Part shown: positions 2,161 through 64,000 of the stretch, one piece after another
Layout: every line of letters begins with the position of its first letter
How positions within the stretch are numbered: position 1 is the stretch's first letter
NCBI GenBank assembly: GCA_029953675.1
Contig: JAMWBK010000011.1
Coordinates: 1,302,001-1,366,000, forward strand
Direction: 5' to 3'
Origin: Rhodosorus marinus CCMP1338
Taxonomy: Eukaryota > Plantae > Rhodophyta
Length of the DNA stretch: 64,000 nt
Notes under the pieces: generated by a model
The model's input: the letters and a program-made list of their open reading frames with translations, nothing else
The model's database searches: none
Told to the model about the DNA's origin: nothing
Made by a program: the position numbers and the translations under genes

Positions 2161-2385
2161 ACGAACTTAGATCTACGAAGTGGTTACTGGTAGATGCGTG
2201 TCGTCGAAGCCGACATTCCGAAGACGGCGTTCGTGTGCGACTTGGGCATTTCGAATGGAGGGTAGCACCCTTTGGGTTGACTTCGTTATCATCCTATTTT
2301 TCGAAAATGATGATTGAAGTACCGAAGGAGTTTCTGGGCAACTGCGTCGTGGTGTACCTGGTTGACATCCTAATATTCAGCGATG
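2161..2385 (+). mobile_element. Degenerate Ty3/gypsy reverse-transcriptase fragment
   Basis: Reads TNLDLRSGYW*MRVVEADIPKTAFVC/GHFEW and EFLGNCVVVYLVDILIFS, versus gypsy consensus KLDLRSGYWQIR..DIPKTAF..GHYEF and FVVVYLDDILIFS. It has an in-frame stop at 2191, a frameshift, and YLDD mutated to YLVD. Confidence 0.78.
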
Positions 2386-5744: not shown

Positions 5745-7503
5745 TCGGAGACGAGTTCGGATTTAGGGCGAAAAGCTTTTGCTCGTGGGTTGAAGGAGAC
5801 GTTTCTTCAGCGTGTTTCGTTGAGCAAAATCACGAGATCACGGAGACTTTCGTGCAAAGTGGACTCTACCTAAAAATCAAAGGTACCAATAACGTCAGCA
5901 ACTTGTCTTGTACATATGGAAGATCGCGGTAGACGTTCACTGCTTCATACTCTAGATCTGTATTGGAACAAACTCACCGCGCCTAACGCATCAACCTGAC
6001 ACTGGTCCAATCATGCTAATCCAGCCTGTACTGCATAAGGTAGATCTATCAAGCTATCTTCGCGCCGATTCTCACTCCTCCGCTGAAGATCTGAGGGCTG
6101 AGCCCGACCTTGGTGGGGACTATAAATAGTGGCCTTCAGTCTCAACAAATCCTTCTCGTTGCCAACTGCTCTAAGAACGTAAGAAGGACAAGAATACCTG
6201 AGAGCTATATATACTACGAGCAGTGAACTGAGAAAGACGAAAAAAAATGGCCGCGAAGATGTTGATGATAGTCGCAGCAGCGATGCTGGCGATGAGCGCG
6301 TTTTGGCGCTCCCGTTAAGTTGAATGATGCAGAGAGAATGTTCAACTTCCCCTGCAGTGGACGTGCAACTTACAAGGTCCAAGTCGACTACCTCTGGACC
6401 GGAAGGACCCACCCCAACGCCTATCCCACTAACGGAAGGTTCTCCCCGACCGTCATTGCATCCCATGGAAAGGGATACACCATCTGGACACCAATGGGCT
6501 ACTCCACAAAGGGAGTTCAGGAGATTGCCGAGCTTGGACACCCCTACACTCTTATCAACGAACTTCGTGCTCGAAACTTCCGCAACGTTTTCGACCGTAA
6601 TATGACCGAGGACGAGACCGAGGACGGATCGGAGACCGTCGAGCTGTACATCGATGTCCAAGGTCGTCGTCCGTACGTATCTGGAATCAGCATGCTCGAA
6701 CCGAGTCCCGACTGGTTCACCGGCTTCGACAACGTCAACCTGTGCGACGTCGAGAACGGCGAGTTCTTGGAGTACTACGAGCAGAACCTCAGCGTATGGG
6801 ATGCTGGTACGGACGCTGGAGAGGACTTCCTCTCTGAGGACGAGAGACAGAGGCCAAGAAACCCGATTGTTTCCATCCTGGGCAGCCGATTCGACGGCAT
6901 CCCGGTTGGAACTGTCAAAATTACGAAGATGGCATAAGAGCTGGTACACCAGCAAGGGTGTGGCTCTTGTATAAAACCCCTTTTATATACTTTTTGTAGA
7001 GACATGGACTTTGCAATATAGCGCTATTGGCCTCCACAAGCGAAGCCGTCTCGTCGTTGTTTACCCGTTTGAATCTTCTTTCATGGAGCATGAATGGTAG
7101 AGGTGCATTTTCTCGTTCCCCACCCAAAATCTAGGATAACCATTAAAACTCACTTCCCACCAAGCCAAATGTCTACGGACACCCTGAAATCACCCATTCT
7201 TCTCCAGTTGCGCTCCAAACCCGCAATAGACCACCCAGTTTTCTTCTTCTCCACCTAGGGCGGGCCAAAACCTTTGGCTACTTGACCGAACTCTACCACT
7301 TCACTCAGCGAGTTGAAGAGTTTTGAAAACCGCCAGCAAGTGCGAGTACTATCTAGTTGATGAACGCTTACTCTCTCCTCGAAGAAATGTGAGGGAGTTT
7401 CATTGTTTTTCACCAAACCTGTCAAAACTGTGCAGCCTTTTTAACGCCGTTCTGAATGCGGGGGGTATTCATTCACCCAATATTGGCTTCGAGCTCGCGG
7501 CTG
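5745..7503 (+). repeat. Third copy of the spondin unit: direct repeat of 1-~1627 (offset ~5883) and inverted repeat of ~2770-4290
   Basis: 5884 'taccaataacgtcagcaacttg' matches position 1; 7261-7503 matches 1381-1627; 5745-5884 is the reverse complement of 4147-4290. Confidence 0.95.
6247..6937 (+). pseudogene. Spondin_N copy C with a +1 frameshift after the signal peptide (pseudogene or consensus error)
   Basis: 691 bp versus 690 bp; 'gcg tttt ggc' at 6301-6304 versus 'gcg ttt ggc' in A/B. It also has L>I and V>E (MLEPSPDWF) substitutions plus several synonymous changes. Confidence 0.8.
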
Positions 7504-24734: not shown

Positions 24735-26167
24735 ATGAAGTTGGGCTTTTTGGTTACATCTGGTGGAGCATGGGGTGGAAAAGGACTGGAGGGAAATGTT
24801 CAGCAACGGAGGCTGTGCTGGACTAGCATGGCGGGGAAGGGGTTTGGTATGCGCCCACGGTTCAAGTACACTGGTAAGCTGCAGCCGGGAGAGTTAAGTC
24901 CGACGAGGACTGTTCCTTAAGGAGATTTTGAGGCCGAGTTATGCTGGTGATGGAATTCCAAAGGAGCCATCTCCCAAGGTTCCGTGGGATATTGAAGTCA
25001 AGTCGGAGGCGGATATTGAGGCTATGAGAGTATCTGGTCGATTAGCTAGAGAGGTTGGCTCGCCTAACGCAAGCGCACTAATCACATGTGTGAGAGTTTC
25101 GTTCAATTTGAACTCGCTACTTTTTCTGCTAGGTGCTGGACATAGCCGGGCGAATGGTTAAACCCGGAGTTTCGACCGATGAAATTGATGCTGCTGTCCA
25201 TGAAGAGTCCTTGAAGAGAAACTGCTACCCTTCTCCTTTGAACTACAGGGGTTTCCCAAAGTCGTGCTGCACATCGGTGAGGTTTTACCACGAGTACATG
25301 TCTTCGTGGCCAGAGATCGTTGCTGATACCTGCGTCTCTGCTGGGATAGATAAATGAAATCATCTGTCACGGTATTCCAGATACAACAATTCTGAAGGAT
25401 GGCGATATCGTAAACATTGACATCACAGTATACCACAACGGATATCACGGCGACTGCTCGGAGACGGTGCTCGTTGGGAACGTTGACGATGAAGGAAAAA
25501 AACTGGTTCGAGTGACCTATGAGTGCCTAATGAAGGCCATGGAAATTTGCAAGGTGAACAATGAGACTCTGGACTGTCCCCTCGAGCGCAGTAACTGACA
25601 CTTGGATTTGGGCCCTGTCCGTACTTAGCCCGGAGTACCTTATTCAGAGATTGGGAACACGATACAGAAACACGCAGACGACAGCGAACTGAGGGTAGTC
25701 ACCGACTTCATCGGCCACGGCATTGGAAAGGCGTTTCATACGACGCCGAACGTTTTGCACTTTGCGAACAACCAGAACAACGGCATTATGAAGGAAGGAC
25801 ACGTCTTCACCATCGAACCCATGATCAACGAAGGTGAGGTCCTGCAAAATTTGGTCTACCCGCAAATGGAGCTTTAGAGGAGGAAACCATGCCGCGCTGA
25901 TCCGATTCTGAAATTCCGCTCCCCGACAGGCACGATCAGGAACGTCATCTGGCCCGATCAGTGGACAGCAGCAACCAAGGATGGGAAGCGAAGTGCTCAG
26001 TTTGAGCACACATTGTTATGTATGATAGTCAAAACGAAAACATGGCTCGTCGCTAGCAGAGCATGTGCTAACGTCCGTCCTTGTTTACGTGCGCAGTAAC
26101 TAAGAACGGAGTAGAACCCTTAACTGGACGTCTGCCAGACAGCAATCCGCTGAGATTCATGGAATAG
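24735..26167 (+). CDS. MAP1: Organellar methionine aminopeptidase type 1, tandem copy A (multi-exon; apparent +1 frameshift at 24917-24918)
   Basis: [27 protein letters not shown]|[49 protein letters not shown]. Removing one T at 'cct taa gga' gives [10 protein letters not shown], collinear with copy B. Confidence 0.85.
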
Positions 26168-26897
26168 TGGTTCGAGAACTCGTCCGGAAACAATCCATCA
26201 AGCAAACTCTTGGGGGCAGTCGGAAGAGGTCTTGCCAGGAAACCGGAAGCATCAAAATCGAAACTGTGGATCTGTTTCGGGTCACTTATTAAAGCTTGAT
26301 CGCTCCTCATGGATTGCTTTTTATAGCTTCTGAATCATCTCAGGTCGCGGTCCAGGAGGTATTCAGATATCGCCTCGAAAACATGGTAGCAAACCTGATT
26401 CGCTGAGTTCGAACGAGGCAGCAAGCGGTCAACGCGCCTTCAAGTGAAATGGTATCCTCTGAATCGCGTTGGTCTTGAATTCGTGTCCTGGAAGGGCAGC
26501 TTTTCCTGAGCGTCCATCTCAAGGTTGCCGCTTCAGATAGGTCCTCTCTAGTGTTAGCACTGTCGAGCATGTCAAGGCAGGATACCTTGATCCGAAGGTC
26601 ATTCAATCCCCTGTCTGAACAAAGACTCTCGGCAGCTCTATTAGTTGGGTGCAGATTGTAGATTGGCATGTGAGAGTTCGAGCCCTATCTTCGAGCTCAG
26701 ATCGATATCTCTTGGAGAAGCTCGCTGCGATTGAGAGTGGTGCTCTGGCTACTGGTGTGGATTTAAGCGAACCCTTTTTGATGTGGGTTTTCGTGGGTAT
26801 GACTGTCTCAGGCATGGCGTCTTGACGTTGAGTGGGTTGCTGTTTTTTTCCGGGCAATCACCAGAGACCGATGGAACTAAGTCCTGAATACAGAGCT

Positions 26898-28410
26898 ATG
26901 GCGTTTGCATCGAGTTTACAATGCCTCCACCGTGGAGAGCCAAACCGTATCTCGGTACAGCCAACTCGGCCGTGCTCCACTAGGATGTCGACAAAGGGCT
27001 TTGGAAGGCCTCGACAAGTGTTCAAGTACACTGGCAAGGTTCGTCCAGGTATTGTGAGCCCGAAGAGATCTGTTCCAGGCGTTATCATGAGACCCAGCTA
27101 TGCTGATGACGGCATACCGAAGGAGAAGCAACCTCAGAAACCGTGGGAGATCGAGATCAAGTCCGAAGAGGATATCGCAGCCATGAGAATCTCTGGACGG
27201 CTTGCTAGAGAGGTACGAACCGATCAGACGATACAAGGCGAAGGTCATCGTCAGAAGCTCTGATACAAGTCTTCAGGTTCTTGATATAGCAGGAAGAACA
27301 GCCGTAGCTGGTGCCTCAACCGAGGACATCGACGTTGTAGTGCATGACGAAACTCTAAAGCGAGGGGCATACCCTTCTCCCCTTAACTATGGCGGATTCC
27401 CGAAGGCCTGCTGTACCTCGGTGAGCGAGATAAAGTACTCTGAAAACCCCGCGCAGCTTAGCGTGATTGAATACGCGTGCTCTGCTTGTCACGTAGGGTT
27501 GCTCCACCGTCCTTTCTAAACTCTAATGGTTCCGTTGCCACCGGCCAAGGTCAACGAGATCATAGGCCATGGAATACCAGATTCGACAGTCCTAAACAAA
27601 GGGGATATCGTTAATGTTGATGTAACTGTATACTACAACGGATTCCATGGCGATTGCTCTGAGACGTTTCTGGTCGGCGATGTGGATCCCGAGGCATCTA
27701 GACTGGTCAGAGTGACATACGAGTGTTTACAACTGGCAATCGCTATTTGCAAGGTAACGCCTGAGCAACAGATGAGGCAATCATGTATGTGGCTCTTGCT
27801 GAAATAATCCGTCGCTTGTCTCTTGTCTGGGTCAGCCTGGTATTCCGTATTCAGAGATTGGAAAAACGATTCAGAGACATGCAGATACCAATGGTGTTGG
27901 CGTGTTCAAGGACGGCGTCGGCCATGGAATTGGACAAGCGTTTCATACGACACCTGATGTTTTGCACTTTGCGAACACTGTGAATAACGGTGAGAATTTC
28001 TTATGCTCTTTTCCCAGTTTGTATGGCACTAAATTTTAGTTTTCGTCGAGGTGTCTCCTTTAGGAATTATGAGAAAGGGACACGTGTTTACAATAGAACC
28101 AATGATCAATGAAGGTATGTGGGCCACGACCACCATGCAAAGTCTCTGCCACCCTATCGCCATACGTAGTTTGTTCGCTCAAGCGAGATTATCAACACGC
28201 GAACGTAGGATCCGCGAGAGGCGTCATATGGCCAGATGGCTGGACCGCAGCAACGAAGGATGGCAGAAGGAGCGCTCAGTTTGAGCATACAGTGCTGAGT
28301 AAGTGAATCATTTTAATCCTGAACTTCATCGCGCTTGGCTCTCTGCTTCTAGTGAAGCGCTCACGGCTTTCGACGAGAAGCGCCCAGCGCAGGATGCGTT
28401 CAACAGATAA
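26898..28410 (+). CDS. MAP1: Organellar methionine aminopeptidase type 1, tandem copy B (multi-exon; last exon uncertain)
   Basis: MAFASS transit peptide; [68 protein letters not shown]. The terminal exon does not splice cleanly into the 'EALT' frame. Confidence 0.83.
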
Positions 28411-52356: not shown

Positions 52357-53490
52357 TCAAGCACAACCTCCCCGAGAGCCCCGACAAGTACAACCGCATT
52401 TTCCAAACGCCAGGTTTCCGGTGCAATCAGCGGAAAGCGAAGCCCCGGCCTTTTCAGGCACGACCGCCTGCTTTGAGGCCGGTGCTTCGTTGCTTTCTGC
52501 CATGTACATTGTACTTCGGTGGTCGTCGATGAGCTCATTGTCCGTTTTAACTTTGACGTCAAGTTCCTGAAGAACCGACTGCTGTTGCTTGCGCACATAC
52601 TTCCTTCTAATGTTCGGGTCCAGTAGTGGGTGGCTCATAACTCGCCAGTGGTAGACTTCCCTTTTTATGGCCATAACTTTCGCGTCAGACTCCATCTTGT
52701 ACCGGCAGAGCTCCTCCAGGTCCGCGATGAGCTGCTTGTTGGCATCGTCTACAATTCGACCAACCAATGGTGGTGGCGCTTTACCAACCCCAAGCTCGGC
52801 TTCGGATGCCTTCCTCTTTCGACTTGTTGTACGAGTACTTGTCGATCCCTTCTCACCCTTTGGGCCGGGCGACATAAACCCCGGAGCTTCCATGACCCCC
52901 AAGACTCCTCTTAAGATATCCCCATCGCCACGTTGACCCGGACTATGGGTACCGAAACCTAATTCTTGCTGAGCCATCTCAGTGGCAGGCCTACCAGATA
53001 ATACATTCTGACTTCTTAAGTATCGATATGCAGCCAAGTGGGGGTAGCTGGGCCCTGAAACATCGTCGACCAAGTATGCTGCCTGAGCTTCGGACAGGTT
53101 TCCGCCTCGGTTGTACAAGTGTGTAGCAATCTTAATCTTCTCATCCGGTGTGGACTGGTATAAAAACTCACTCCCGTCCATCTCGACGGCGAGAAGTTTT
53201 TCGTGAAACTTCAGGGTCGCAGCGCTTATCTTCAGCCACGCCTTATGGCATGCCGTTGGTGTCCTCGACTCCCAGTGCACTGTTGTATTAAGCTCTTGCA
53301 ATATATCAGCTTCTTTCAATCCAACCAAGGCCTCGCGTTTTGGTTTGTGCTTGAGGAACGCGTCCCGCAACCGCACCGCATACGAGCTGGTCTCGGGCTT
53401 GGATATCACAGCATCATTACCAGACAGCCGTATAGCGGCCTTGCAGAGAGCAATCTCTTCAGTCTCAGTCCATCTAGCAGACCTCCCCAT
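52357..53490 (-). CDS. Myb/SANT-like protein of the NAM-associated / Harbinger ORF1 type (377 aa, intronless)
   Basis: 'WTETEEIALCKA...' followed by 'RTPTACHKAWLKI...KF...SG/ST.DE.IKIA..LY' helical pattern and a basic NLS-like 'RKRK'. Confidence 0.55.
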   Translation of the reverse strand: MGRSARWTETEEIALCKAAIRLSGNDAVISKPETSSYAVRLRDAFLKHKPKREALVGLKEADILQELNTTVHWESRTPTACHKAWLKISAATLKFHEKLLAVEMDGSEFLYQSTPDEKIKIATHLYNRGGNLSEAQAAYLVDDVSGPSYPHLAAYRYLRSQNVLSGRPATEMAQQELGFGTHSPGQRGDGDILRGVLGVMEAPGFMSPGPKGEKGSTSTRTTSRKRKASEAELGVGKAPPPLVGRIVDDANKQLIADLEELCRYKMESDAKVMAIKREVYHWRVMSHPLLDPNIRRKYVRKQQQSVLQELDVKVKTDNELIDDHRSTMYMAESNEAPASKQAVVPEKAGASLSADCTGNLAFGKCGCTCRGSRGGCA

Positions 53491-54740: not shown

Positions 54741-56723
54741 CTAGCCGATTGGAACACCGTCCACAACATCGTTCCCACTGCCACCAAAATTGTAATCTGT
54801 TCCCGATCCACTGATAATCGTGTCATCTCCACCGCTTCCCCGGTTGTAGTTGATTCCTGATTCTTCCTCTATTAAGTCGTCCCCATTCCCTCCGTAAGAC
54901 CGGTCATCGTCTGAACCGCCGTACAAACTATCCGAGCCGGATTCTCCGTACAAGAGATCGTTGCCGCTGTTTCCTGCAATGTTATCATCCCCGCTACCGC
55001 CACGGAGCTCATCGTCATCCTCCCCACCCTCAATAAAGTCCGCACCGGAGCCACCTTGAACGAAGTCGTCGCCCAACCCACCGCTGATCGTATCAGTACC
55101 CTTTCCCCCGGTTATTTCATCATCTCCGTCTCCACCGTCAATGGAATTGTTTCCGTCTTCATCGTAGATTTGGTCATCACCGTCCCCACCAAAATTACGA
55201 TCGTCAAGCGGGCCAGAGCGAATGAAGTCGTGTCCAGCGCCACCATAATTGGAGTTGGATCCTTCGAGGTCAATGATCGCGTCATTCCCTCCCCCCCCGA
55301 ACGACAGGTCATTCGCTGCGCCACCGTATAGGCGGTCCATTCCCTCGCCTCCGTAGAGGGTATCATCTTTGGATCCTCCATGCACCAGATCATTTCCTTC
55401 TCCGCCAAAGACTCGGTCGTCGTCAGCGCCTCCATAAAGCAGATCATCACCCTCGTCCCCGTACACGAGATCGTCTCCAGCGTTGCCCAGAACTATGTCC
55501 TCGTCGTGACCTCCGCGAATGAGGTCTGCGCCCTTTCCGCCGTGGACATCATCCCGTCCATATCCACCAATGATGATATCCTCGCCTTGGCCAGCTCTCA
55601 TAAAATCGTCCCCTTCGCCCCCAGACAGGTAATCATTGCCAAATCGACCCCATATTCGGTCGTTGCCATCACCTCCGTACATTAAGTCGTTTCCAGATGA
55701 TCCATCCAAAGTATCATCACCCTCACCACCCAACAATGTATCGTCTCCAAGTCCGCCATCCAACAAGTCATCACCCTCGCCTAACTCCAGAACATCATTC
55801 CCTTCCTCCCCATAAGCCGAATCATCACCAAGACCCCCAGAAATAGTGTCGTTACCAATGCCACCCTGAATAAAGTCGTCTCCGTCTTCACCGAGGAGCG
55901 TATCGGAACCCTCTTCACCCGAGATGGCGTCGTTTCCGTGACCACCGAAAATCTCGTCATCTCCTTCTCCTCCAAAAATTATGTCGTTGCCGCCCAGACC
56001 GTACATCTTGTCATCCCCTCCAAGTCCATAGATCAAGTCGATTCCTTCTGTTCCGAATATGACGTCCGCATCTTCGCTGCCGTATATCTTGTTCATGCAA
56101 GAGAAGCTGACTGAGCATAGGCTGCCACCAGATTCATCTTCGTCGTTCTCGCAATCCTTGTTGTCAACTGGTCTGGTCATAACCGAGCTGGAACCGTCGA
56201 TCATCTCCGCCTTTGCGATTATGCATGTATCTGTGTTGCAGCAGTCCCCGGAGGCTGATGCAATTTGGTCCAGGCAGATGTCAACTCTATTGGCAATCGG
56301 GTCGAATCCCGCCATCGAGTCGTCAAGAGTGATGGGGAATCTGTGCGGAACAGTGGGCAGGTCCTCATTATTGCAGCTTTTGAACACGCCGAGCGCGACG
56401 CTCACAAGAGTAGCTCCATTTCTTGCCCCGAACCTGACCCGAACACATGGAGTGTCATCTTCCACCACCGATTTGATGCATAAACTACCAAGCTTGGTTC
56501 CGTCCGCCGTCTTCATGCCCACACAGTACTCCTGAAAGCTTGCTCCGAAGGCACCCGGAACCCAGCTCTCTGCACATGTTCCACCCAGCTGTCTAGAATT
56601 CCATTCTAAAGGACGAGAGCTGCGCAATGTGCTTCCAGAATGGGTCAGCACCAGCCCTTCTATATCCAGGATCAAAGCAGCAGCGCCAACGGCTAGTAAC
56701 ACTGCTTGAGAGAGGACCTTCAT
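54741..56723 (-). CDS. Secreted RTX/hemolysin-type Ca2+-binding repeat protein (660 aa, intronless)
   Basis: Signal peptide MKVLSQAVLLAVGAAALIL; Cys-rich ~160-aa domain; then ~440 aa of near-continuous GGxGxDx(L/I)x nonapeptides to the C-terminus. Confidence 0.9.
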   Translation of the reverse strand: MKVLSQAVLLAVGAAALILDIEGLVLTHSGSTLRSSRPLEWNSRQLGGTCAESWVPGAFGASFQEYCVGMKTADGTKLGSLCIKSVVEDDTPCVRVRFGARNGATLVSVALGVFKSCNNEDLPTVPHRFPITLDDSMAGFDPIANRVDICLDQIASASGDCCNTDTCIIAKAEMIDGSSSVMTRPVDNKDCENDEDESGGSLCSVSFSCMNKIYGSEDADVIFGTEGIDLIYGLGGDDKMYGLGGNDIIFGGEGDDEIFGGHGNDAISGEEGSDTLLGEDGDDFIQGGIGNDTISGGLGDDSAYGEEGNDVLELGEGDDLLDGGLGDDTLLGGEGDDTLDGSSGNDLMYGGDGNDRIWGRFGNDYLSGGEGDDFMRAGQGEDIIIGGYGRDDVHGGKGADLIRGGHDEDIVLGNAGDDLVYGDEGDDLLYGGADDDRVFGGEGNDLVHGGSKDDTLYGGEGMDRLYGGAANDLSFGGGGNDAIIDLEGSNSNYGGAGHDFIRSGPLDDRNFGGDGDDQIYDEDGNNSIDGGDGDDEITGGKGTDTISGGLGDDFVQGGSGADFIEGGEDDDELRGGSGDDNIAGNSGNDLLYGESGSDSLYGGSDDDRSYGGNGDDLIEEESGINYNRGSGGDDTIISGSGTDYNFGGSGNDVVDGVPIG

Positions 56724-57095
56724 GCTTCGCTGGCCTTGGTTAGAAATCCCCGCTAACCGCCTTGCCCCACAACATCGACTCGCTTTCCTTCCACATCCAA
56801 CTCACGCTTGAATGCTCCTTGCAGTACCTGTCCGTTCCGCAAGTGATGGTAAAAACGTGCATTTATAACACTGTTATTTAACTTCTGGCTTTTTGCTCAA
56901 CTAGCATTTAAGCACATGCAAGTCTGTGCACTCAAGCCTCTATATTTCTTGTTATTTTTACGTATTTTCATGTTTTTAAGTTATTATTTCATGTTCATTC
57001 TTGTTTCTGATGCCTTATTTTCGTGCTTTGGGGCCCAGATTTGCACAACTTTAGCTTATTTTTAGGTGCTCGAAGCTCTTATTTGATTTTAAGGT

Positions 57096-57130
57096 TTACG
57101 TTAGCCTGGGGTTACTACGTTAGTCTGGGG
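57096..57130 (+). repeat. Two tandem copies of the 16-mer TTACGTTAG(T/C)CTGGGG at the left edge of the retroelement cluster
   Basis: 'ttacgttagcctgggg ttac tacgttagtctgggg' read directly. Confidence 0.85.
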
Positions 57131-57136
57131 TAAATC

Positions 57137-57635
57137 GATCGTGAACGCAGAGCCAGAATACGCTCCGCTGCAGGAGCCGGTTCAGGCGCATGGCTACGAG
57201 CTTTACCACACTTTGGCCTGCGCAAATTGAGCGTTCCGGGAATGCAGGTGAGTATTCGACAACTGTTGGGGTTGCCGATTCCAGGATTACGGACGACGGA
57301 GAGGTGTACTACTTGTCTTAGTACGTATCGTACTAATGGCGTACAAAGATTTCACCACTGTCGTACCTCGACTGAGCTGTGGCAAAGGCGCCATGATGAG
57401 ATATGTACTGAGCTGGCGAGATGGCTTAACCGTTGGCAATTTCGAGAGGTCAAGCAAGAACCCATAGACTACTTTACGAACTCGAATCTACGACCTGATC
57501 TAGTGAGTATCCACCCTAGGACATGGCAACGTTTTGCCGTTTTGTGACAGTAATCTCACCCCTCCAAGCACGGCACCTACCTAAGGGCCACGACACCAAC
57601 GGATACGCCGTGAAACATGCTGAGAGATGGAAATC
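57137..57635 (+). mobile_element. 5'-truncated, degenerate CRE-like (RLE) non-LTR retrotransposon fragment, family B
   Basis: RARIRSAAGAGSGAWL...QVSIRQLLGLP...CTTC...HHC...RRHDEICTELARW...LRPDLV, i.e. CCHC finger plus start of a restriction-like endonuclease; homologous to 58400-58900 on the minus strand. Confidence 0.85.
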
Positions 57636-57665
57636 CCTGGTCACTTTCACGCCAGGAATCGATAA

Positions 57666-57954
57666 CCCCAGACGAACGTAACTGTAAGCTTTCTTGGGCA
57701 GCCGCCTATTGCGGCGTAACATTACGTCTATCACTATTTAGGGAATCGCTTACCGCAACCCCGCTACCGGGGTCTCATGCTACGTTCAAAAGAAAAAACA
57801 GGGACCAGTGGATTATCCAGCTGGTCCACACGCAAAGCGCCCGGGCCAATCGCCGCGTTTCCGAGCCATAACATCCTGTTCAATTGAGAACGCAAGTCAC
57901 GTAGCTCCTCGTTTCTATTCAACAGGTGTTTGCAACTATCCCGCAGGAAATCTT
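57666..57954 (-). mobile_element. Short (~290 bp) 5'-truncated 3' end of a family B CRE-like element, in tandem with the next copy
   Basis: Diverged direct repeat of 57956-58272 (e.g. gctaccggggtctca.gctacgttcaaaagaaaaaa, agctcctcgtttctat..aacaggtgtttgcaact); ends in the 16-mer. Confidence 0.85.
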
Positions 57955-57955
57955 A

Positions 57956-59040
57956 CCCCAGACTAACGTAACCGTAAGCTTTTATTGGGCAGCTGCCTAC
58001 TGCAGTTAGCTTTTATTGGGCAGCTGCCTACTGCAGCGTAACACTACCTCGAACACTATCTAGGGAAATGCTTACGGGAATCCCGCTACCGGGGTCTCAA
58101 GCTACGTTCAAAAGAAAAAATAGGGACCAGTGGGTTCTCCAGCTGGTCACGCAAAGCGCAGAGCGCAATCGTTGCGTTTCCCTGCCATAATATCCTGTTC
58201 AAGTGGGACCGTACGTCGCTTAGCTCCTCGTTTCTATGCAACAGGTGTTTGCAACTGTCCTGCAGGAAGTCTTGCGTCATCTTCCCGCTCCGCCCAAAGG
58301 TCTCTATGGCTATCGGGATGAAGTCGTCATCCGGTTTCCCTATAGTCATCGCCTCCTTGTAGTGTGCGATTTTCCAAGTCTCTGCTGCCCTCGCTGCGTA
58401 TCCGTTCTCGGCTTGGCTACGCCTCAGATGTTTCCCTGTAGTGGTGAAACCACCGTTATATCCAACGCGTACCGTTGCCTTGTCCTCGGATGTGTAGCAA
58501 TAATGTCAGGCCGAAGTCCGTAGTTGTCAAAGTACCGCTCAGGTTCTTGTTCGACGTCTATAAAGTTCATCTTCTCAGCCACCGCGCCAACTCGGTGCAG
58601 ATTTCGTCGTGTCTCCGTTGCCAAAATCCAGTAGAGGTAGGGCAGTGATGGAACCTTTGCACTCCAGTAGGACCGTGTTTACTCCTGCAACTAGTGCACT
58701 TCTCGGTGGTCCGCAATCCGTAACCCCAGAATTGGCAAGCCCAACAGTAGTCGTATGTTCACCTGCGTCTCAGCCGCATTCAACTTCTTCGGTGTCAGTG
58801 TCGGTATTTCCCGTATCCAGACCCCTGATCTGCAGCCGGCGGCTGACCGTATTCGAGCTCGGTTTTCAGGGGAGATCCGCGGATTGCTGACCAAGCGTTG
58901 GAATGCACAATGGTGTGCCTCTCGAGAGAGGGTTTGTTGTATAGAACCATTATTCCAAGCTGCAGTCTCGTCTGCCGCGCCTCGCTGTGGCGCTGCTTGC
59001 GTTTGTTGCAGGGTAGTGAGTCTCAAGATCCTGGGCGGGG
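57956..59040 (-). mobile_element. 3' portion of a family B CRE-like non-LTR retrotransposon (CCHC, RLE, 3' UTR), frameshifted
   Basis: NRARIRSAAG.RSGVWI...QVNIRLLLGLP; RRHDEICTEL; GLRPDII; LDITVVSP; GYAARAAETWKIAHY; FIPIAIETFGR; stop at 58086; duplicated AATAAA (31-bp period, 57977-58036) followed by the 16-mer. Confidence 0.88.
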
Positions 59041-59044
59041 TTTC

Positions 59045-59600
59045 AGGGAGAAGTCTCTGTTGTACTGGGCGCTACAAAATAAGCGCGACAAACCGTTCGA
59101 AGAAATCGCGAAACTACACCAACAGGAGCTCAACACACAAGTCGCCCTGTTCAGGTTCTGCGCGGAACACGGCTCGACTACGCTCTAATTTTGTTTAGCC
59201 TACCAGTTTGGAAGAACGCTTGCACGAGAGGGGGACAAGATGATGCCATATCATCTGGAAATTCTATTCGGAGGCCTCGCCACTACGGCCACAGAGGCCA
59301 CTACGGCCACAGAGGACGACGAGTACGTACAAATGATTTCGGACCAGATTGCACTGCCCGGCCGCTTGGGGGGGGGGCTGGGATTTGCTACCCGAACGCG
59401 TGTCCAACCTATCGCGTTCTACTCGGCATGGAGAAACACTTTCCGCAGCAATCAAGGCGACTGGCCATACATAACTGCGCTGGAGCGGGAGGTCTCGGCA
59501 GAACGCACGTCACCAACATCCCCACGGACAGAGCTAGAATGGTCAACTGCACAGCTCGCGGACCAGATCTGCACATCAGCGCTAGCAATACAACAGAGAC
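59045..59600 (+). mobile_element. CRE-like RT thumb fragment in opposite orientation to the adjacent 3' portion
   Basis: 'TQVALFRFCAE' and 'DQIALPGRLGGGLGF...AFYSAW' match the post-YxDD region (Q..LP.RLGGLG) also seen in ORF 60369. Confidence 0.75.
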
Positions 59601-59781
59601 TTCTCCCTGACCAACATCCCCACCGACAGGGCTAGAATGGTCAACTGCACAGATCGCGGACCAGATCTGATCTGCACATCAGCGCTAGCAATACAACAGA
59701 GACTTCTCCCTGACCAACATCCCCACCGACAGAGCTAGAATGGTCAACTGCACAGCTCGAGGACCAGATCTGCACATCAGC
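59512..59781 (+). repeat. Tandem repeat, ~2.7 copies of a 98-bp unit
   Basis: Units start at 59512, 59610 and 59713 (accaacatcccca..gacag.gctagaatggtcaactgcacag..cgcggaccagatctgcacatcagc...); the second unit carries an extra 'gatct'. Confidence 0.92.
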
Positions 59782-59949
59782 CTTCACTCCTGTTGGATGT
59801 AATGTCGGCTGCCTATGGGGATGGAATGTATAGTAACTCCTTCTCTGGTCGCTTGTACCCCAGGAATCTCACGATTGACCACTCGCGTGGTAGTCAGTGT
59901 TCGCCCGTACACTGTGCACTTGCCGAGTTGCAGCCTTGCTCCGAGTGCA

Positions 59950-61950
59950 GGAAGGACGGTTTACCCCCATGCTAGGGATTCCTTTAAGGCTTGTAGCGGC
60001 CCCACAATGGTGATATCATCGTGAATAGCGACGATGCTTTCATTGGGGAACTTGGTGCGCAACGCCCTTAGGACGGGCGCCAGGGATAGGGCATGCAGAA
60101 AAGGACCCAGTGGGTCACCCTGTTGAACTCATACCACGACGACGTGTGCCTCCTGGGGCCCCCTGATACTCTAGCGCTCGCTTATGATCGTCTCCGCTCC
60201 TTGACTTCGCGGGTTGACTTGGAGGTTAATCATCAGAAATCGTTCTAGTGGGGAGGTGTAGCTGCACAAGAGCAGCAGGTACCTGCGTCGTTCCAGGATA
60301 TTTGGAGACCGGATGGTTTTGTCCACTTAGGCATCCCCTACGGGTCGCCGTCCTTCGTTGAAGGCGAGTTGCTGCAGCTCCTCGGTAAGCACAGACAGCT
60401 GGTTGCAGAGCTTCGACGGCTCCCTCCGGGCTTTCTCCAGTGCGCGTTGTTGCTGTTTCGGTATTGTTGCAGTCAGCGGTTAACCTATTGGCTTCGCTCA
60501 CTTCCAACTCATTGGGGCCGTTGGTTGGCCACTCGTGCGGATGCTGAAAGTTTCCGTGACCTGGGGTATTTTCTCGATGAAGAGCTGAGCGCTCTGCCGC
60601 GACCCACCTGTGATGTTGTGCGCGCCCAGGTAGGCCTCCCATTGCGATTGGGGGGACTGGGCCTCTGCAATCGTGTTGTGGTCCAACCCGCAGCCGCAGT
60701 AGGGGCCTGGGGAACCGCACTTCCCACTTTGAGCAGCTTGGGTATCTCGAAGTTCCGCAATTTGATGGCGAGCCTCTCGCGGGGTGTCTTGCTTCCCAGC
60801 GTACCGGAAAGCGCCCAAGACTTGTTTCTGGAGCTCCAAACCGCCCTGAATTCCTGTACTAGTCTCCCCGAAACCGTTCAACCCCGTCTTCCTGACTGGC
60901 GAGCTGTATTTGACCGCTCTCGAGGCTCCGCCCCGGGGATTCGTCCTGCGCCTGAACCTGTTCTAGGGGAGATTGACCCAGTGGTTGCCGCAGAAGAAGA
61001 AGTTCCAGTTGATCCTCCTGATGATTCCCAGCGCGCTGGGAGCCGAGTTCAAGCACGCACGGATGCGCTGCAAAATATCCTTTCTTGGGACTTGCACCGT
61101 GCTGCATATGGCCGACTCCTCGCGCAGATGGTCTCATCTTCCCGCGCTCGCGCCCGCCTACGTAGTCTTGGAGGGGTTATTAGCTCTCAGTGGCTCATGA
61201 CCGTACCAGCCTTTCCGCCACTCACACTGTCGGATTTCGAAGTGCGTACTTCACTGCGCTTATACCTCGGCTTACATCAGCCCCCTTGGCCGTACGAGAT
61301 GGGTTCGTCGTGCCCTCTCTGCTCTCAGACTGAAGACAACGCAGATTTTGGCGCCCACCTGCTCGCTAGTTGCCCGGCGGTGAAAGGTGCTCGAACCCGC
61401 CGCCATACACGGATCTTGAACCTGTTATACCGGGAACTTCGGCCTATAGTCCGGCAAGCCCGTCTGGAAATCGAACGTGAGAAACCTTTACCCGTCGCGG
61501 ACTTTCAAAATGATGAACGCCGTGTAGCCGACCTGGTGATCACCTGTGACGACAGCCGCCGTACCACATACGTTGATCTTGCTGTTCCTAACCCTCAAGC
61601 TAGTCGTTATCTCCCGGCTGCGGGGGAGCGCCGTGGATCTGCCGCCGCCAGCATGAGACGCCGCAAAGAGATCAAATACGCGGGGGCTTTGTCTTCCCCT
61701 GGTGTTCGTGCTTCGGCACTAGCACATCGCTTGGTACCCCTGATCATTGAGTGCTTTGGGTTCATGGACTCTGTTGGTTCTCGCTGGCTTCGGGAGTTGT
61801 TCCGCGAACGCCCTGACCGTCTTCAATCGTTGTTTACCCGCTTAAGTTTCCTGCTGTGGCGCATGAATGCCGCTTTGATGTTGGAGGCGCGAGTACTTCG
61901 CCGCGCTTAGTCTTTTTTTCCCCTCGGGGTTTTTTTTTCAGCCTCCGATT
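59950..61950 (+). mobile_element. CRE-clade non-LTR retrotransposon, RT C-terminal half plus CCHC and RLE endonuclease; 5' part decayed
   Basis: SYHDD at 60129-60143, in frame with ORF 60369-61910 apart from one stop at 60246; GFVHLGIPYGS..FV; QVGLPLRLGGLG; CPLC...HLLASC; RRHT; RRVADL; YVDLAV; RRKEIKY; LVPLIIECFG. Confidence 0.92.
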
Positions 61951-61962
61951 AAACCATTCGTT

Positions 61963-64000
61963 CGTTGAACTCCCGTTGCTGCTTCTAGCGTAAGGCGGGA
62001 AGTTTGGGTCTGACCATGCGGAGTTCACCAACCACAGAGCGTGGGTGTATCCATGTCGTCGCTTCCGTAACCGAGTCGATATGCTGCCGCCAGCTCTGGG
62101 AAGTGTTTGTCGACAAGCTTCTTAGCCACGCGTCGATCAATTCGGTTAAATGCATTCTCAAGGTCAAGCCTGAGGACCACTGAATCAGGTTCGCATGACA
62201 AGTGGGCCTGGATCGCATGCAGCGAGCGTTCACACCCGCCGCTGACGCCAATACCGAGTTGTAGTGGCACCAGGAGCTTGCGCACCCCGTCGACTACAGC
62301 GCGAAGGGCCCGCTGCGTCGCTAGCTTTCGTAGAACCTCTGGTACGCCGATGGGCCGAACGCCGGGGTTTTCCTGGGGTGCTGATCCTTGCTTAGGCTTC
62401 GCGAATGGTAGGAGTCTGCTGCTGCGAAGGGCGCGAGTCAGAGTCGGGGAGAATTTCTCCGGAGCGGATGCGAGTTGTCGCAGTGTGGACGCGCGTCATC
62501 AGCGTGTTGTCTCTCGCTTCTCAGGGTAGTTAGCCTCTGAATAAACGGATCATCATCACTCGAATCAATGCCACTTGTGTCTGTTCAGTTCCACCTTGTG
62601 TTTGTTCCGCTCGGAGTCCGCTAGGGCCCGGGCTCTTGACCCTGAGGGAGACGTGCCACAACGGACAGGAGTCCCTCTTCAGCCGCCGTTGTCGGATCCG
62701 ACCTGTGCTTAAGGGCGTCGGTATCCAGGTTGAGGGAGTTCAGCTCTTGTGCGACCTCGTCGGGAAGGTCACCCCCGGCCGGGTCGGGAAAGAGCGCTTT
62801 GAGTTGGCGCCAGGTAGCCTCCGCAAAAGGTGCCATCTCGGTGGCCTGTAGTCGACGGGCAGCATCTGAGAGCCGCCCCAAATGTGCTAGCTTCAAAGCT
62901 TGCTTGTGGCGCCCCAGAATTTGGCGTCGAAAGGCGTCAGCTCCTTCCAGTGCGATTGTATGCGGCAGCGTAGACGCCTTGTCTTCTAGCGCGCTCCATA
63001 CCGTAGAGAATTCTCCTTCAAGTACGTGCGTTGCCTGAGTGCCAGGATCAAGTGCAGAGTGTCCAAGCACGAGGCCGGGAAGTCCGACAAGAAGCAGGCT
63101 GGCGTTCGGTGGTGCGCTGCTGTCCATGGCAAGCTCTAGTGCCGCACGGAGAAGGCGGTTCCACGTATTGACCTGGGCGCGTGGCAGGAATCGCCCTGTG
63201 GGCACCGGACAGTGTGTAAGACGCGTCCACTGCCTGCCTCCTTCCGTCACGTCGTCGACGAAGTCGCTCCACCGTTTAATCCAGTCTTGAAGATCCGAGA
63301 AGAACCTAGGCTCGTCGCGGCGTCGCTTCATTCCCCTACTTCTGCTTGGCATTATTGCGTTGTGTTTTCCTCGCGATCCTACGTGTCCATTGCGTGTTGG
63401 TTAGGGTGAGTATCCGCCTGGCTCACATTCGTATTCTTCGGGGTCTCCATTGATACCGGGGTCATCTCTGTATCTGGTCCGGGGCCAGCAGCGGATACTC
63501 GCTGACGCTTCTGTTGAGGTGGCTCCGGAAGGTTGCAGGGGAGTTCCGCGTGGGGATTGTCCTCGCGGTCAGTCTCCGCCGGTACTTGGGATGTTGCCCC
63601 GGAATCACCCTGAGTGTCAACAATCGCACGGGCTGCCTGTGCGTCACCCTGAAGAGACGAGGCTTCAGCGTCTGAGCTCGTTGCGGCTGCAGGCTCTGGG
63701 GGTTCCGCGCTCTCCCCGGGTACCGCGGGCGGAGATTGTCTTGCTTTGAGGAGTTCCAGTCGTGCCTCAAGATACTCGTGGAGCGCTGCGAGAGTATTGG
63801 AGGAGAGATGCCGCCGGCGGATCTTCGAACGAGTCCAGATAAGCTGTTCGATGGCCCGCTTCAGAGTTTGGGCCGCAATATCTGCGGGGCAATACCTTGG
63901 CGTTCTAGGTAGCCGAGCAGGTTGTCAGGCTACAGAGTCTCGCCAGTGTACAGGCTCACTTGACAATCCGCGTGTCGCAGGGTAAAGGATCCGAAAATCC
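61963..64000 (-). mobile_element. 5' portion of a CRE-clade non-LTR retrotransposon, frameshifted, truncated at the GVQ motif
   Basis: PGPSGLRAE, SSRLLPFAK, GVRPIGVPEVLRKL, QLGIGVSGGCE...HA, LRLDLENAFNRIDR, FPEL...Y, ATGVQ, after which similarity stops; continues beyond the window end. Confidence 0.9.

What the first reader, a model, noticed from the sequence alone, without database searches (positions are those of the whole stretch)
54741..56723. Eukaryotic secreted protein built from a Cys-rich domain fused to a very long bacterial-type RTX beta-roll
Seen: ER-type signal peptide, a domain of about 160 aa with roughly ten Cys, then about 440 aa of GGxGxD nonapeptides; no introns; located at the edge of a transposon graveyard. 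Established: RTX repeats are Ca2+-binding beta-rolls typical of type I-secreted Gram-negative and cyanobacterial proteins. Inference: a chimeric HGT product rerouted to the eukaryotic secretory pathway, perhaps a Ca2+-dependent matrix, adhesion, mineral- or ice-binding scaffold. The repeats are diverged at DNA level, suggesting long-term protein-level selection.
Basis: partly seen in the sequence, partly recalled or inferred. Interest (0 to 1): 0.7.

Follow-up and report, generated by a model that had tools for sequence, protein, structure and literature searches.

The report
Red-algal secreted protein with RTX rod
A nuclear gene of the red alga Rhodosorus marinus encodes a secreted protein that joins an alga-specific 12-cysteine head domain to 49 bacterial-type calcium-binding RTX repeats, most likely a calcium-stiffened rod of the cell's extracellular matrix, and it has not been described before.

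Summary
Window 54741-56723 (-) is an intact single-exon ORF of 660 aa. It has a hydrophobic N-terminal signal-like peptide and a roughly 160-aa domain with 12 Cys. Then come 49 consecutive GGxGxDxUx nonapeptides (aa 213-653) in one 9-residue register (Pfam PF00353, E 2.6e-85). AlphaFold models them as one continuous beta-roll (pLDDT about 90-98).

The window is Rhodosorus marinus CCMP1338 nuclear contig JAMWBK010000011.1 (1.44 Mb). Neighbouring genes carry annotated introns, and codon usage matches the host, so this is not contamination.

The Cys domain has no Pfam or PDB match. In 1.84 billion representative proteins, its only credible relatives are other R. marinus proteins. One paralogue repeats the module (Cys-RTX-Cys-RTX). 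Two others join Cys domains to several hundred residues of (PTPS)n, a mucin/HRGP-like matrix architecture.

The protein lacks the C-terminal type I secretion signal and cap that define bacterial RTX proteins.

Best reading: a head-plus-rod extracellular matrix or surface protein whose rod is a Ca2+-folded beta-roll, exported through the ER. A bacterial origin of the repeats is likely and ancient, but no donor can be identified. I found no transcript for this gene and no publication on the family. It is a new variant of a known kind, of moderate-to-high interest.

The parts
54741..56723 (-). Complete single-exon CDS, 660 aa plus stop; the annotated hypothetical gene of Rhodosorus marinus contig JAMWBK010000011.1 (record positions 1356741-1358723)
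56655..56723 (-). aa 1-23: N-terminal signal-like peptide (MK, hydrophobic core VLLAVGAAALIL, then DIEG). The cleavage site was not predicted.
   Evidence: Hydropathy; helix at aa 2-15; aligned with the paralogue's N-terminus. No SignalP run was possible.
56088..56585 (-). aa 47-212: 12-Cys all-beta head domain (Cys 50, 67, 82, 93, 117, 150, 161, 162, 167, 191, 203, 209). It ends in a C-x-N-x-I junction that runs straight into the first RTX repeat.
   Evidence: Alignment A1; Cys positions; AlphaFold pLDDT 60, all strands; no Pfam or PDB match; relatives only in R. marinus
54765..56087 (-). aa 213-653: 49 RTX nonapeptides (U-x-G-G-x-G-D/N-D-x) in one unbroken register; predicted continuous Ca2+-binding beta-roll; net charge about -98 at pH 8
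54741..54764 (-). aa 654-660 (VDGVPIG) plus stop. This short native C-terminus has no type I secretion signal, no cap domain, no KDEL/HDEL motif and no hydrophobic tail. The first RTX block of the paralogue ends with a similar motif (GNDLVDQGPVTP).
   Evidence: no RTX-like coding after the stop in any frame
56724..57130 (-). A/T-rich 5' flank, presumed promoter and 5' UTR; no upstream in-frame extension
   Evidence: inference only
57134..63400 (.). Gene-free stretch with decayed non-LTR retroelement fragments on both strands. This is context, not part of the gene.
   Evidence: RVT_1 E 0.013, below threshold; other motifs seen by eye

Best explanation
This is a real nuclear gene of the unicellular marine red alga Rhodosorus marinus. 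It encodes a secreted 'head plus rod' extracellular matrix or cell-surface protein.

An N-terminal signal peptide takes the chain into the ER. There a 12-cysteine, all-beta head domain, found so far only in Rhodosorus, is locked by disulfides. The 49 RTX nonapeptides that follow bind roughly one Ca2+ per repeat and fold into one continuous beta-roll rod. By standard beta-roll geometry the rod would be about 12 nm long. It should stay rigid in seawater at about 10 mM Ca2+.

Paralogues attach the same head to a proline/threonine/serine-rich rod instead. The RTX roll is therefore best read as an alternative, calcium-dependent rod or spacer in a family of matrix building blocks. It possibly also bridges anionic wall or mucilage polysaccharides through Ca2+.

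The protein has no C-terminal secretion signal or cap, and it enters the ER N-terminus first. I infer that the head domain, which is fused without a linker to repeat 1, nucleates or caps the roll from the N-terminal side. That is the reverse of the C-to-N folding of bacterial RTX domains.

The RTX segment most likely came from a bacterium long ago. It was already fused to the head before the paralogues diverged.

Shown: the gene, its architecture, host linkage, family membership and age. Inferred: ER export, Ca2+ binding, matrix location, N-terminal capping and bacterial origin.
For: Architecture and fold:
- ORF and domains.
- PF00353 E 2.6e-85.
- AlphaFold gives one strand every 9 residues from aa 211 to 660, with pLDDT 89-98 over aa 211-600.
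- The nearest solved structures are RTX beta-rolls.

Host gene:
- 1.44-Mb contig with neighbours that carry annotated introns.
- Eukaryotic genes across the window: Fip1, Tdp1, peroxidase.
- Codon-usage correlation with host genes 0.78, within the host range 0.67-0.86. Gly codon shares are close (GGA .34/.34, GGT .28/.28, GGC .19/.23, GGG .20/.15).

Family:
- Paralogue NDN08_004411 on contig 7 is collinear from signal peptide through head into RTX, 33% identity over 417 aa, and repeats the module.
- All credible head-domain relatives are R. marinus. They include MMETSP transcripts, so the family is expressed.

Matrix context:
- L005 and L006 carry uninterrupted 932-aa and 1186-aa frames with 3 and 2 head domains followed by hundreds of residues of (PTPS)n/(TP)n.

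Calcium and solubility:
- RTX net charge is -98, matching 49 x 2+. No transmembrane segment.

No bacterial export features:
- The protein ends 7 aa after the last repeat, and nothing RTX-like follows the stop.
- Bacterial RTX domains need a C-terminal cap and fold C to N (PMC9120197, PMC12874523, found).

Age:
- No DNA repeat, and synonymous sites are saturated.
Against: - No transcript or peptide evidence for this particular gene. Its exact protein is not in the 15-billion-sequence collection. No protein more than 28% identical to its head turned up in the exhaustive search, although R. marinus MMETSP peptides are in that collection. Six 8-aa patterns found no transcript in the JGI contigs.
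- The signal peptide was not checked with a dedicated predictor.
- The head domain is modelled only at pLDDT 60 alone and below 50 in the full-length run. Its packing against the roll, and so the N-cap idea, is untested.
- Matrix location rests on analogy with paralogues.
- The gene borders decayed retroelements and a 10-kb gene-free stretch.
- Bacterial origin has no phylogenetic support. Identity to bacteria (38-42%) equals identity to the algal paralogue's RTX (40-43%).
Confidence: 0.55

Rival explanations
1. Bacterial contamination or an assembly chimera: the RTX ORF belongs to an associated bacterium and was mis-joined to algal DNA.
For: RTX repeats are overwhelmingly bacterial. The 120 best whole-protein matches listed are all bacterial or unnamed environmental proteins. 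The gene is intronless.
Against: - It is embedded in a 1.44-Mb long-read contig, 3-8 kb from genes that carry annotated introns.
- Codon usage cannot be told apart from host genes.
- The N-terminal 212 aa are a domain found only in R. marinus, including in poly(A)-derived MMETSP transcriptomes of other strains.
- A collinear paralogue sits on another 2.2-Mb contig.
- It has a eukaryote-style N-terminal signal peptide and no T1SS C-terminus.
Confidence: 0.02
2. A silent or decaying relic: the ORF is intact but no longer expressed or used, stranded beside retroelement debris.
For: No transcript or matching peptide for this gene in the collections searched, although other family members have MMETSP transcripts. 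A 10-kb gene-free, retroelement-littered stretch lies upstream.
Against: - A 1983-nt open frame survives in DNA where other frames close within about 150 codons.
- Position 8 is Asp or Asn in 49/49 repeats, and the register is perfect although synonymous sites are saturated. This needs long purifying selection.
- All 12 Cys are retained.
- MMETSP covers only one or two culture conditions and different strains.
Confidence: 0.12
3. A high-capacity luminal Ca2+ buffer or store (calsequestrin-like) in the ER, Golgi or secretory vesicles, rather than a matrix protein.
For: About 49 predicted Ca2+ sites and a net charge of -109. The protein is very acidic, soluble and targeted to the secretory pathway.
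Against: - No KDEL/HDEL-type C-terminus; the protein ends in VPIG.
- Paralogues place the head domain in mucin/HRGP-like extracellular architectures.
- Known RTX sites hold Ca2+ structurally rather than exchanging it quickly (general knowledge of RTX proteins, not tested here).
Confidence: 0.08
4. A surface-fibril, adhesion or gliding protein analogous to cyanobacterial oscillin, possibly inherited from the cyanobacterial ancestor of the plastid rather than acquired later from a proteobacterium.
For: Oscillin is a rod-shaped extracellular RTX glycoprotein of 646 residues with 46 repeats that forms surface fibrils (PMC3034196, read). That is nearly the same size and repeat count as here (660 aa, 49 repeats). 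Cyanobacterial RTX proteins are among the hits.
Against: - The oscillin sequence could not be compared here.
- The named top hits are mostly Rhodobacterales, and repeat composition gives no lineage signal.
- No head-domain or RTX relative was seen in other red algae. That argues against inheritance from the primary endosymbiosis, unless the gene was lost widely.
- Motility of Rhodosorus cells was not examined.
Confidence: 0.15
5. The nonapeptide array arose inside the alga by convergence and internal amplification, with no gene transfer.
For: Short Gly/Asp repeats are simple. No donor can be identified, and identity to bacteria is only consensus-level.
Against: - Full nine-position agreement with the bacterial profile, including the hydrophobic positions (PF00353 E 2.6e-85; NCBIfam RTX models E down to 6e-66).
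- 42% identity over 503 aligned residues to a bacterial protein.
- No trace of recent internal amplification.
- To my knowledge (not tested here) the motif is very rare in eukaryotes.
Confidence: 0.05

Closest known systems
Oscillin of Phormidium uncinatum (cyanobacterial surface-fibril RTX glycoprotein)
   Same: Extracellular, rod-shaped, and made mostly of Ca2+-binding nonapeptides. Almost the same size and repeat count: 646 aa with 46 repeats (PMC3034196) against 660 aa with 49 repeats here.
   Different: Bacterial, with no ER signal peptide and no 12-Cys head. S-layer-type RTX proteins characteristically lack cysteines (PMC3034196).
Long continuous-RTX 'calcium-binding proteins' of marine Rhodobacterales (Paracoccus, Pseudorhodobacter, Loktanella, Roseobacter) and other bacteria
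   Same: These are the best sequence matches: E down to 1e-114 and 31-49% identity across the listed hits (38-45% for most named Rhodobacterales) over the repeat region. They have equally long in-register runs of nonapeptides: median 41, maximum 62, and 40 of 120 with 49 or more.
   Different: They are about 1000-1150 aa long. They have different N-terminal domains (peptidase M10 C-terminal domain, Hint, glycosyl hydrolase and others). After the repeats they carry a C-terminal extension, named a type I secretion target domain for P0022, that is missing here. None has the Cys domain.
RTX domain of the Bordetella adenylate cyclase toxin (closest solved structure, PDB 7usl chain C)
   Same: Same nonapeptide beta-roll: phmmer E 1.9e-38 and Foldseek E 1.7e-8.
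   Different: The toxin's RTX domain is split into five blocks. It needs a C-terminal cap and folds C to N (PMC9120197, PMC12874523). It sits behind hydrophobic pore-forming and acylated segments. The algal protein has one unbroken block, no C-terminal cap or signal and no hydrophobic segment, so nothing suggests toxin activity.
Pherophorins of Volvocales (PF12499), head-plus-rod matrix glycoproteins
   Same: Secreted, with globular Cys-containing domains joined to an extended rod. Two Rhodosorus family members with (PTPS)n rods are auto-named 'Pherophorin domain-containing protein' in UniRef. The role as a matrix building block is analogous.
   Different: PF12499 detects real Volvox pherophorins (E 8e-42 and 1e-60) but none of the Rhodosorus proteins, even at E up to 10. 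Profile-profile comparison gives probability 1%, E 0.054. Pherophorins have no RTX repeats.
RTX S-layer proteins (RsaA of Caulobacter, SwmA of Synechococcus)
   Same: Acidic surface-layer proteins in which Ca2+ bound to RTX repeats is proposed to mediate assembly or anchoring (PMC3034196). RsaA appears among the weak structural matches.
   Different: They have few RTX repeats (five in RsaA), are exported by T1SS, lack cysteines, and form two-dimensional lattices on a bacterial outer membrane.

Membership tests
RTX proteins in the sense of Linhartova et al. 2010 (PMC3034196) and PMC6891781 | Tandem Gly/Asp-rich nonapeptides, GGxGxDxUx | tested here: met
   PF00353 E 2.6e-85 over 15 stretches. 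49 in-register units, with Asp or Asn at position 8 in 49/49.
RTX proteins in the sense of Linhartova et al. 2010 (PMC3034196) and PMC6891781 | Parallel beta-roll fold | tested here: met
   This is a prediction only. AlphaFold pLDDT is 89-98 over aa 211-600, with a strand every 9 residues. Foldseek and phmmer find solved RTX beta-rolls.
RTX proteins in the sense of Linhartova et al. 2010 (PMC3034196) and PMC6891781 | Ca2+ binding that drives folding | not testable with these tools
   Ligand positions are conserved, and the net charge of -98 matches 49 Ca2+. A Ca2+ titration of recombinant protein is needed.
RTX proteins in the sense of Linhartova et al. 2010 (PMC3034196) and PMC6891781 | Uncleaved C-terminal type I secretion signal after the repeats | tested here: not met
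   The protein ends 7 residues after repeat 49 (VDGVPIG, then stop). No coding continues past the stop. The bacterial hits carry a C-terminal extension after the repeats.
RTX proteins in the sense of Linhartova et al. 2010 (PMC3034196) and PMC6891781 | Export by a dedicated T1SS (ABC transporter, membrane fusion protein, outer membrane factor) of a Gram-negative bacterium | tested here: not met
   The locus is eukaryotic and nuclear. Its neighbours are WD40, cytochrome b5, a short-chain dehydrogenase and a methyltransferase, and the protein has an N-terminal signal-like peptide instead.
Pore-forming RTX toxins (leukotoxins, haemolysins) | Hydrophobic pore-forming domain and acylated segment N-terminal to the repeats | tested here: not met
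   No hydrophobic segment beyond the signal peptide (maximum 19-aa hydropathy 1.06). The NCBIfam RTX_toxin model scores 223 bits against a cut-off of 1000, and its best match lies within the repeats.
Pherophorin (Pfam PF12499 / DUF3707) | Match to the pherophorin domain profile | tested here: not met
   No hit at E up to 10 for the window protein or any Rhodosorus relative. The positive control with Volvox phII and phV2 gave E 8e-42 and 1e-60. hhalign probability 1%. UniRef nevertheless names two relatives this way, so a very remote link is not excluded.
Rhodosorus 12-Cys head-domain family (proposed here) | Domain of about 160 aa with a shared cysteine framework (C...C...C...C-x-R-x-(R/K)-F...C...C...CC-x3-C...C...C...C), preceded by a signal peptide | tested here: met
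   Alignment A1. An HMM built from A1 scores the window gene at E 2.4e-62 and finds 2-3 copies in L002, L005 and L006. Phmmer hits: P0122 at E 3.4e-23, P0124 at 2.6e-8.
Rhodosorus 12-Cys head-domain family (proposed here) | Head followed by an extended rod (RTX roll or Pro/Thr/Ser-rich tract) | tested here: met
   RTX in the window gene and P0122. What look by eye like degenerate RTX-like repeats in P0124/P0131 (Pfam finds no RTX there). (PTPS)n in L005 and L006. P0125 and P0129 are the head alone.

The most novel reading that the evidence does not exclude
This would be the first characterised eukaryotic lineage to have domesticated the bacterial RTX beta-roll and reversed its logic. Instead of post-translational, C-terminus-first export through a type I system with a C-terminal folding cap, the roll enters the Ca2+-rich ER N-terminus first. 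It is nucleated by an N-terminal disulfide-locked head fused directly to repeat 1. This yields a calcium-stiffened rod that the alga uses interchangeably with polyproline-type rods to build its extracellular matrix.
Probability: 0.3. Interest if true: 0.75.

Novelty: new variant of a known kind. Interest (0 to 1): 0.6.

Why it matters
RTX beta-rolls are textbook bacterial modules. Their biology is explained by type I secretion: they stay unfolded in the low-Ca2+ cytosol, leave C-terminus first, and fold from a C-terminal cap.

This is a eukaryotic, ER-routed RTX protein with no C-terminal cap and an N-terminal disulfide-rich head. It gives a natural test of whether a beta-roll can be nucleated from the other end and can fold during N-to-C translocation in a Ca2+-rich lumen. 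That bears on RTX folding theory and on the engineering of Ca2+-switchable beta-roll scaffolds and hydrogels.

It is also a clean candidate for ancient bacterium-to-alga domain transfer followed by domain shuffling. It points to a previously unrecognised family of red-algal matrix proteins (12-Cys head plus rod), in a group whose extracellular matrix proteins are, to my knowledge, almost unknown.

Tried and rejected
1. A word-indexed search with the head domain alone found nothing. With the profile A1 it returned only two R. marinus proteins.

2. The whole-protein search was swamped by long bacterial RTX proteins and gave no eukaryotic hit in the top 120.

3. Three hits of the exhaustive search were rejected as repeat-driven false positives: P0123 (7139-aa repeat protein with no shared Cys framework, which reads like an animal stereocilin/otoancorin-type protein), P0126 (ROCO/COR-B protein) and P0130 (low-complexity repeat).

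With the single head domain it found no relative.

5. The pherophorin lead from UniRef names was tested with real Volvox sequences taken from PMC9818292 Table S1. It was not supported.

6. A Foldseek search with the head-domain model gave only generic beta-sandwich matches, with TM about 0.3 and E of 0.06 or worse. The PDB sequence profile search gave nothing.

7. Donor inference failed. Identity to the algal paralogue's RTX equals identity to bacterial RTX. Position-specific repeat composition shows no taxonomic ordering.

8. I first thought an unbroken run of 49 repeats was exceptional. It is not: 40 of the 120 best bacterial hits have runs at least as long.

9. I first took the spliced models of NDN08_007381 and NDN08_000642 as proof of introns in head-domain genes. 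The loci carry uninterrupted 932-aa and 1186-aa frames, so those models are probably wrong, and I dropped that argument.

10. I looked for higher-order periodicity or recent internal duplication of repeats. There is none.

11. I looked for RTX coding beyond the stop codon, which would indicate truncation. There is none.

12. Ice binding was rejected. The variable turn position is mostly Glu, Ser or Asp, unlike the Thr-rich ice-binding turn I recall from the bacterial Ca2+-dependent antifreeze protein. That protein appears only as a weak structural match.
Full report
**1. What is in the sequence**

The minus strand of window 54741-56723 carries one ATG-to-stop ORF of 660 aa. No other frame in the region stays open for more than about 150 codons. 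The protein has four parts.

(a) aa 1-23: MK followed by an uncharged hydrophobic core, VLLAVGAAALIL, then DIEG. The 11-residue hydropathy mean reaches 2.8. Nothing later in the protein is hydrophobic enough for a membrane span.

(b) aa about 47-212: a domain with exactly 12 cysteines (50, 67, 82, 93, 117, 150, 161, 162, 167, 191, 203, 209). There are none elsewhere.

(c) aa 213-653: 49 nonapeptides of the form U-x-G-G-x-G-(D/N)-D-x in a single register with no insertion or deletion. Position 8 is Asp in 46 and Asn in 3. Gly3 is present in 42 repeats, Gly6 in 41, Gly4 in 32, and a hydrophobic residue at position 1 in 43.

(d) A seven-residue tail, VDGVPIG, then the stop.

Pfam scores the repeats as HemolysinCabind (PF00353) at E 2.6e-85 over 15 stretches. 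NCBIfam RTX models match at E down to 6e-66, all far below their whole-protein cut-offs, with the best matches lying within repeat regions. Only the 'ER-type' nature of the signal peptide remains an inference, because no dedicated predictor was available.

**2. Where the window comes from**

An exact look-up finds the 660-aa product as a called gene on NCBI assembly GCA_029953675.1, contig JAMWBK010000011.1 (1,442,050 bp). The window corresponds to record positions 1302001-1366000.

The accession belongs to the long-read, near-chromosome-level nuclear assembly of the unicellular marine red alga Rhodosorus marinus CCMP1338 (Stylonematophyceae). That assembly is 31 Mb, with 8392 genes and 24,821 introns (PMC10250338).

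Downstream of the gene, within 3-10 kb, lie called genes for a WD40 protein, a cytochrome b5, a short-chain dehydrogenase and a methyltransferase. For the first three, the genomic span exceeds the coding length, which implies introns. Elsewhere the window encodes typically eukaryotic proteins such as Fip1 and tyrosyl-DNA phosphodiesterase. The 10 kb upstream hold no called gene.

**3. Not contamination, and not recent**

Relative codon usage correlates with the pooled neighbouring host genes at r = 0.78. That is inside the leave-one-out range of those genes (0.67-0.86). The shares of the 139 Gly codons are close to the host's, and GC3 is 0.53 against 0.46-0.57 for neighbours.

Tandem Repeats Finder sees no DNA repeat even at score 30. 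At residues that are identical between repeats, the fraction using the same codon is 0.25-0.43 at every offset from 1 to 24 repeats. That is about the chance level, and no higher-order period appears. So the array is old. It has not been amplified recently, and it has been kept in perfect register with its ligand positions intact while synonymous sites randomised. That is strong evidence of long purifying selection on the protein.

**4. The fold**

A full-length AlphaFold run used 26 sequences: the algal relatives plus bacterial RTX hits. It gives pLDDT 89-98 from aa 211 to 600, a short dip at 606-612, and 67-84 to the end. There is one short strand every nine residues throughout. This is a single continuous beta-roll.

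Sequence and structure searches of the PDB return RTX beta-rolls first: the RTX domain of the Bordetella adenylate cyclase toxin at phmmer E 1.9e-38 and Foldseek E 1.7e-8, then lipase RTX domains. A Ca2+-dependent antifreeze beta-helix and the RsaA S-layer protein appear as weak matches.

With 18 residues per turn and about 4.8 Å rise per turn (standard beta-roll geometry, from general knowledge), 49 repeats would give a rod of about 12 nm. The RTX region has a net charge of about -98 at pH 8, which 49 bound Ca2+ would neutralise.

**5. The head domain and its family**

The N-terminal 220 aa gave nothing in a word-indexed search. An exhaustive phmmer pass over 1.84 billion representative proteins gave nine hits. 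I reject three as repeat-driven artefacts.

The other six all trace to Rhodosorus marinus:
- P0122 = NDN08_004411, on contig 7
- P0127 = NDN08_007381, on contig 2
- P0128/P0132 = NDN08_000642, on contig 6
- P0124 = an MMETSP transcript that shares a 90% cluster with NDN08_001264
- P0125 and P0129 = R. marinus MMETSP peptides

The alignment shows a shared cysteine framework and a conserved C-x-N-x-I motif that runs directly into the first RTX repeat.

The domain has no Pfam match and no PDB sequence match. It is modelled as an all-beta structure at modest confidence (pLDDT 60, pTM 0.59). Foldseek finds only generic beta-sandwich resemblances.

UniRef auto-names two members 'Pherophorin domain-containing protein', so I tested that link. 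PF12499 is present in the library and detects real Volvox pherophorins taken from PMC9818292 Table S1 (E 8e-42 and 1e-60). It detects no Rhodosorus protein. A profile-profile comparison of the two domain alignments gives probability 1%. Homology to pherophorins is therefore not supported, although the architectural analogy is real.

**6. What the paralogues show**

P0122 aligns collinearly with the window protein from the signal peptide through the head into the RTX region: 33% identity over 417 aa. It then repeats the whole module, giving head-RTX(23)-head-RTX(about 12). The head-RTX fusion therefore predates the duplication, and 'head plus roll' behaves as a unit. Its first RTX block ends ...GNDLVDQGPVTP, much like the window protein's ...GNDVVDGVPIG. 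This suggests the short C-terminus is native. Nothing RTX-like follows the stop in any frame.

P0124/P0131 has a head followed by what look by eye like degenerate RTX-like repeats, though Pfam finds no RTX there.

A six-frame search with an HMM of the head domain gave the most telling result. The loci of NDN08_007381 and NDN08_000642 carry uninterrupted frames of 932 and 1186 aa. Each has a signal-like start, three or two head domains, then several hundred residues of (PTPS)n/(TP)n. These frames are much longer than the annotated, apparently mis-spliced models.

That is the layout of mucin-like or hydroxyproline-rich extracellular matrix glycoproteins. The head domain thus belongs to a family of secreted 'head plus rod' proteins in which the rod is either a Pro/Thr/Ser tract or an RTX roll.

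**7. How it most likely works**

Shown: the architecture, the family, the host linkage and the age.

Inferred: the signal peptide directs co-translational entry into the ER. The 12 cysteines form disulfides there. The RTX repeats bind Ca2+ and fold into a rigid acidic rod. The protein is then secreted into the wall or mucilage, where seawater Ca2+ keeps it folded. There it acts as a spacer or strut, and perhaps as a Ca2+ bridge to anionic polysaccharides.

Bacterial RTX proteins are defined by repeats that precede an uncleaved C-terminal type I secretion signal (PMC3034196; PMC6891781). In the adenylate cyclase toxin, the best-studied RTX domain, folding starts at a C-terminal cap and propagates C to N (PMC9120197, PMC12874523).

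The algal protein has neither the signal nor the cap, and it would enter the ER N-terminus first. I therefore propose that the head, fused without a linker to repeat 1, serves as the folding nucleus or cap at the N-terminal end. The structure predictions could not test this step, because the head is poorly modelled in the full-length run.

**8. Origin of the repeats**

The 120 best whole-protein matches listed are all bacterial or unnamed environmental proteins, at E 1e-114 to 1e-71 and 31-49% identity. Those that carry names are mainly marine Rhodobacterales, with some gamma- and betaproteobacteria and cyanobacteria. Many of them have equally long in-register runs: median 41, maximum 62. So the length of the array is not unusual for that class of protein.

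Identity to the algal paralogue's RTX (40-43%) is no higher than identity to bacteria (38-42%). Repeat-position composition shows no taxonomic ordering. Ancient acquisition from a bacterium is the most economical reading, given how strongly bacterial the motif is. The donor, and the choice between later HGT and inheritance from the plastid ancestor, cannot be resolved here.

**9. Weak points**

I found no transcript or peptide for this gene. The exact protein is absent from the 15-billion-sequence collection. No close orthologue appeared in the exhaustive search, although R. marinus MMETSP peptides are included and other family members are found there. Six peptide patterns found nothing in the JGI contigs. 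The MMETSP strains differ from CCMP1338 and were sampled under few conditions, so this is only weak negative evidence.

The upstream 7 kb contains decayed retroelement pieces. There is a sub-threshold RVT_1 match at 62028-62495 (-), plus zinc-knuckle and endonuclease-like motifs that I recognised by eye. 'Transposon graveyard' is a fair description but rests on thin evidence.

**10. Comparison with what is known, and novelty**

Functionally and architecturally the nearest known protein is oscillin. It is a rod-shaped extracellular cyanobacterial RTX glycoprotein of 646 residues with 46 repeats (PMC3034196). By sequence, the nearest are the long RTX 'calcium-binding proteins' of marine Rhodobacterales.

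The algal protein meets the repeat and (predicted) fold criteria of the RTX family. It fails the two criteria tied to type I secretion, and it has none of the features of RTX toxins. See the membership table for each feature.

Six full-text searches found no paper describing an alga-encoded RTX family or this Rhodosorus domain. The genome paper does not mention 'hemolysin'.

I rate it a new variant of a known kind: a known repeat module in a new kingdom, with a new partner domain, a new export route and probably reversed folding polarity. Interest is 0.6. The gene and its architecture are solid and would surprise RTX specialists. Expression, location and mechanism still have to be shown.

Noticed in passing
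window 1-7322: Three copies of a unit of about 1.4 kb (two direct, one inverted; 92-99% identical). Each encodes a 229-aa protein with a signal-like N-terminus and a Spondin_N domain (PF06468, E 1.9e-38). This is a recently amplified gene for a secreted protein.
   Followed up: partly
window 57134-63400: Gene-free stretch with decayed non-LTR retroelement fragments on both strands. There is a weak RVT_1 match at 62028-62495 (-) (E 0.013). CCHC-knuckle plus restriction-like-endonuclease-type motifs are visible by eye in 57134-57544 (+) and 60249-61907 (+). A shared 'RARIRSAAG..G.W' motif occurs in three pieces. A 103-nt unit is repeated three times at 59463-59766.
   Followed up: partly
L005:7545-10340 and L006:7896-11453 (R. 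marinus contigs 2 and 6): Uninterrupted 932-aa and 1186-aa reading frames (signal-like start, 3 or 2 Cys head domains, then hundreds of residues of PTPS/TP repeats). They are much longer than the annotated spliced models NDN08_007381 (301 aa) and NDN08_000642 (327/449 aa), and called minus-strand genes overlap their ends. The published models look wrong.
   Followed up: partly
L002:10885-14079 and L005:120-1175: Genes with a glucose/sorbosone dehydrogenase (GSDH, PF07995) domain lie next to two different members of the Cys-domain family (P0122 and P0127). The one in L002 also has Big_5 and NPCBM domains. This could be coincidence or a shared neighbourhood of matrix genes.
   Followed up: no
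window 25627-28310: Two segments 74-75% identical, 2.2 kb apart. Their translation (…[23 protein letters not shown]…) reads like the C-terminus of a type 1 methionine aminopeptidase. This suggests a diverged tandem gene pair.
   Followed up: no
window 52357-53490 (-): A 377-aa called gene lies immediately downstream of the RTX gene on the same strand. It has no Pfam match, and its function is unknown.
   Followed up: no
L003:211-1329: The MMETSP transcript for the NDN08_001264 orthologue has an open frame that extends upstream of the called Met through a hydrophobic stretch (VWIGCFFIAVLVAL), with no in-frame ATG in this assembly. The genome-derived protein P0131 has a longer N-terminus, so the transcript-derived model probably starts too late.
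   Followed up: no
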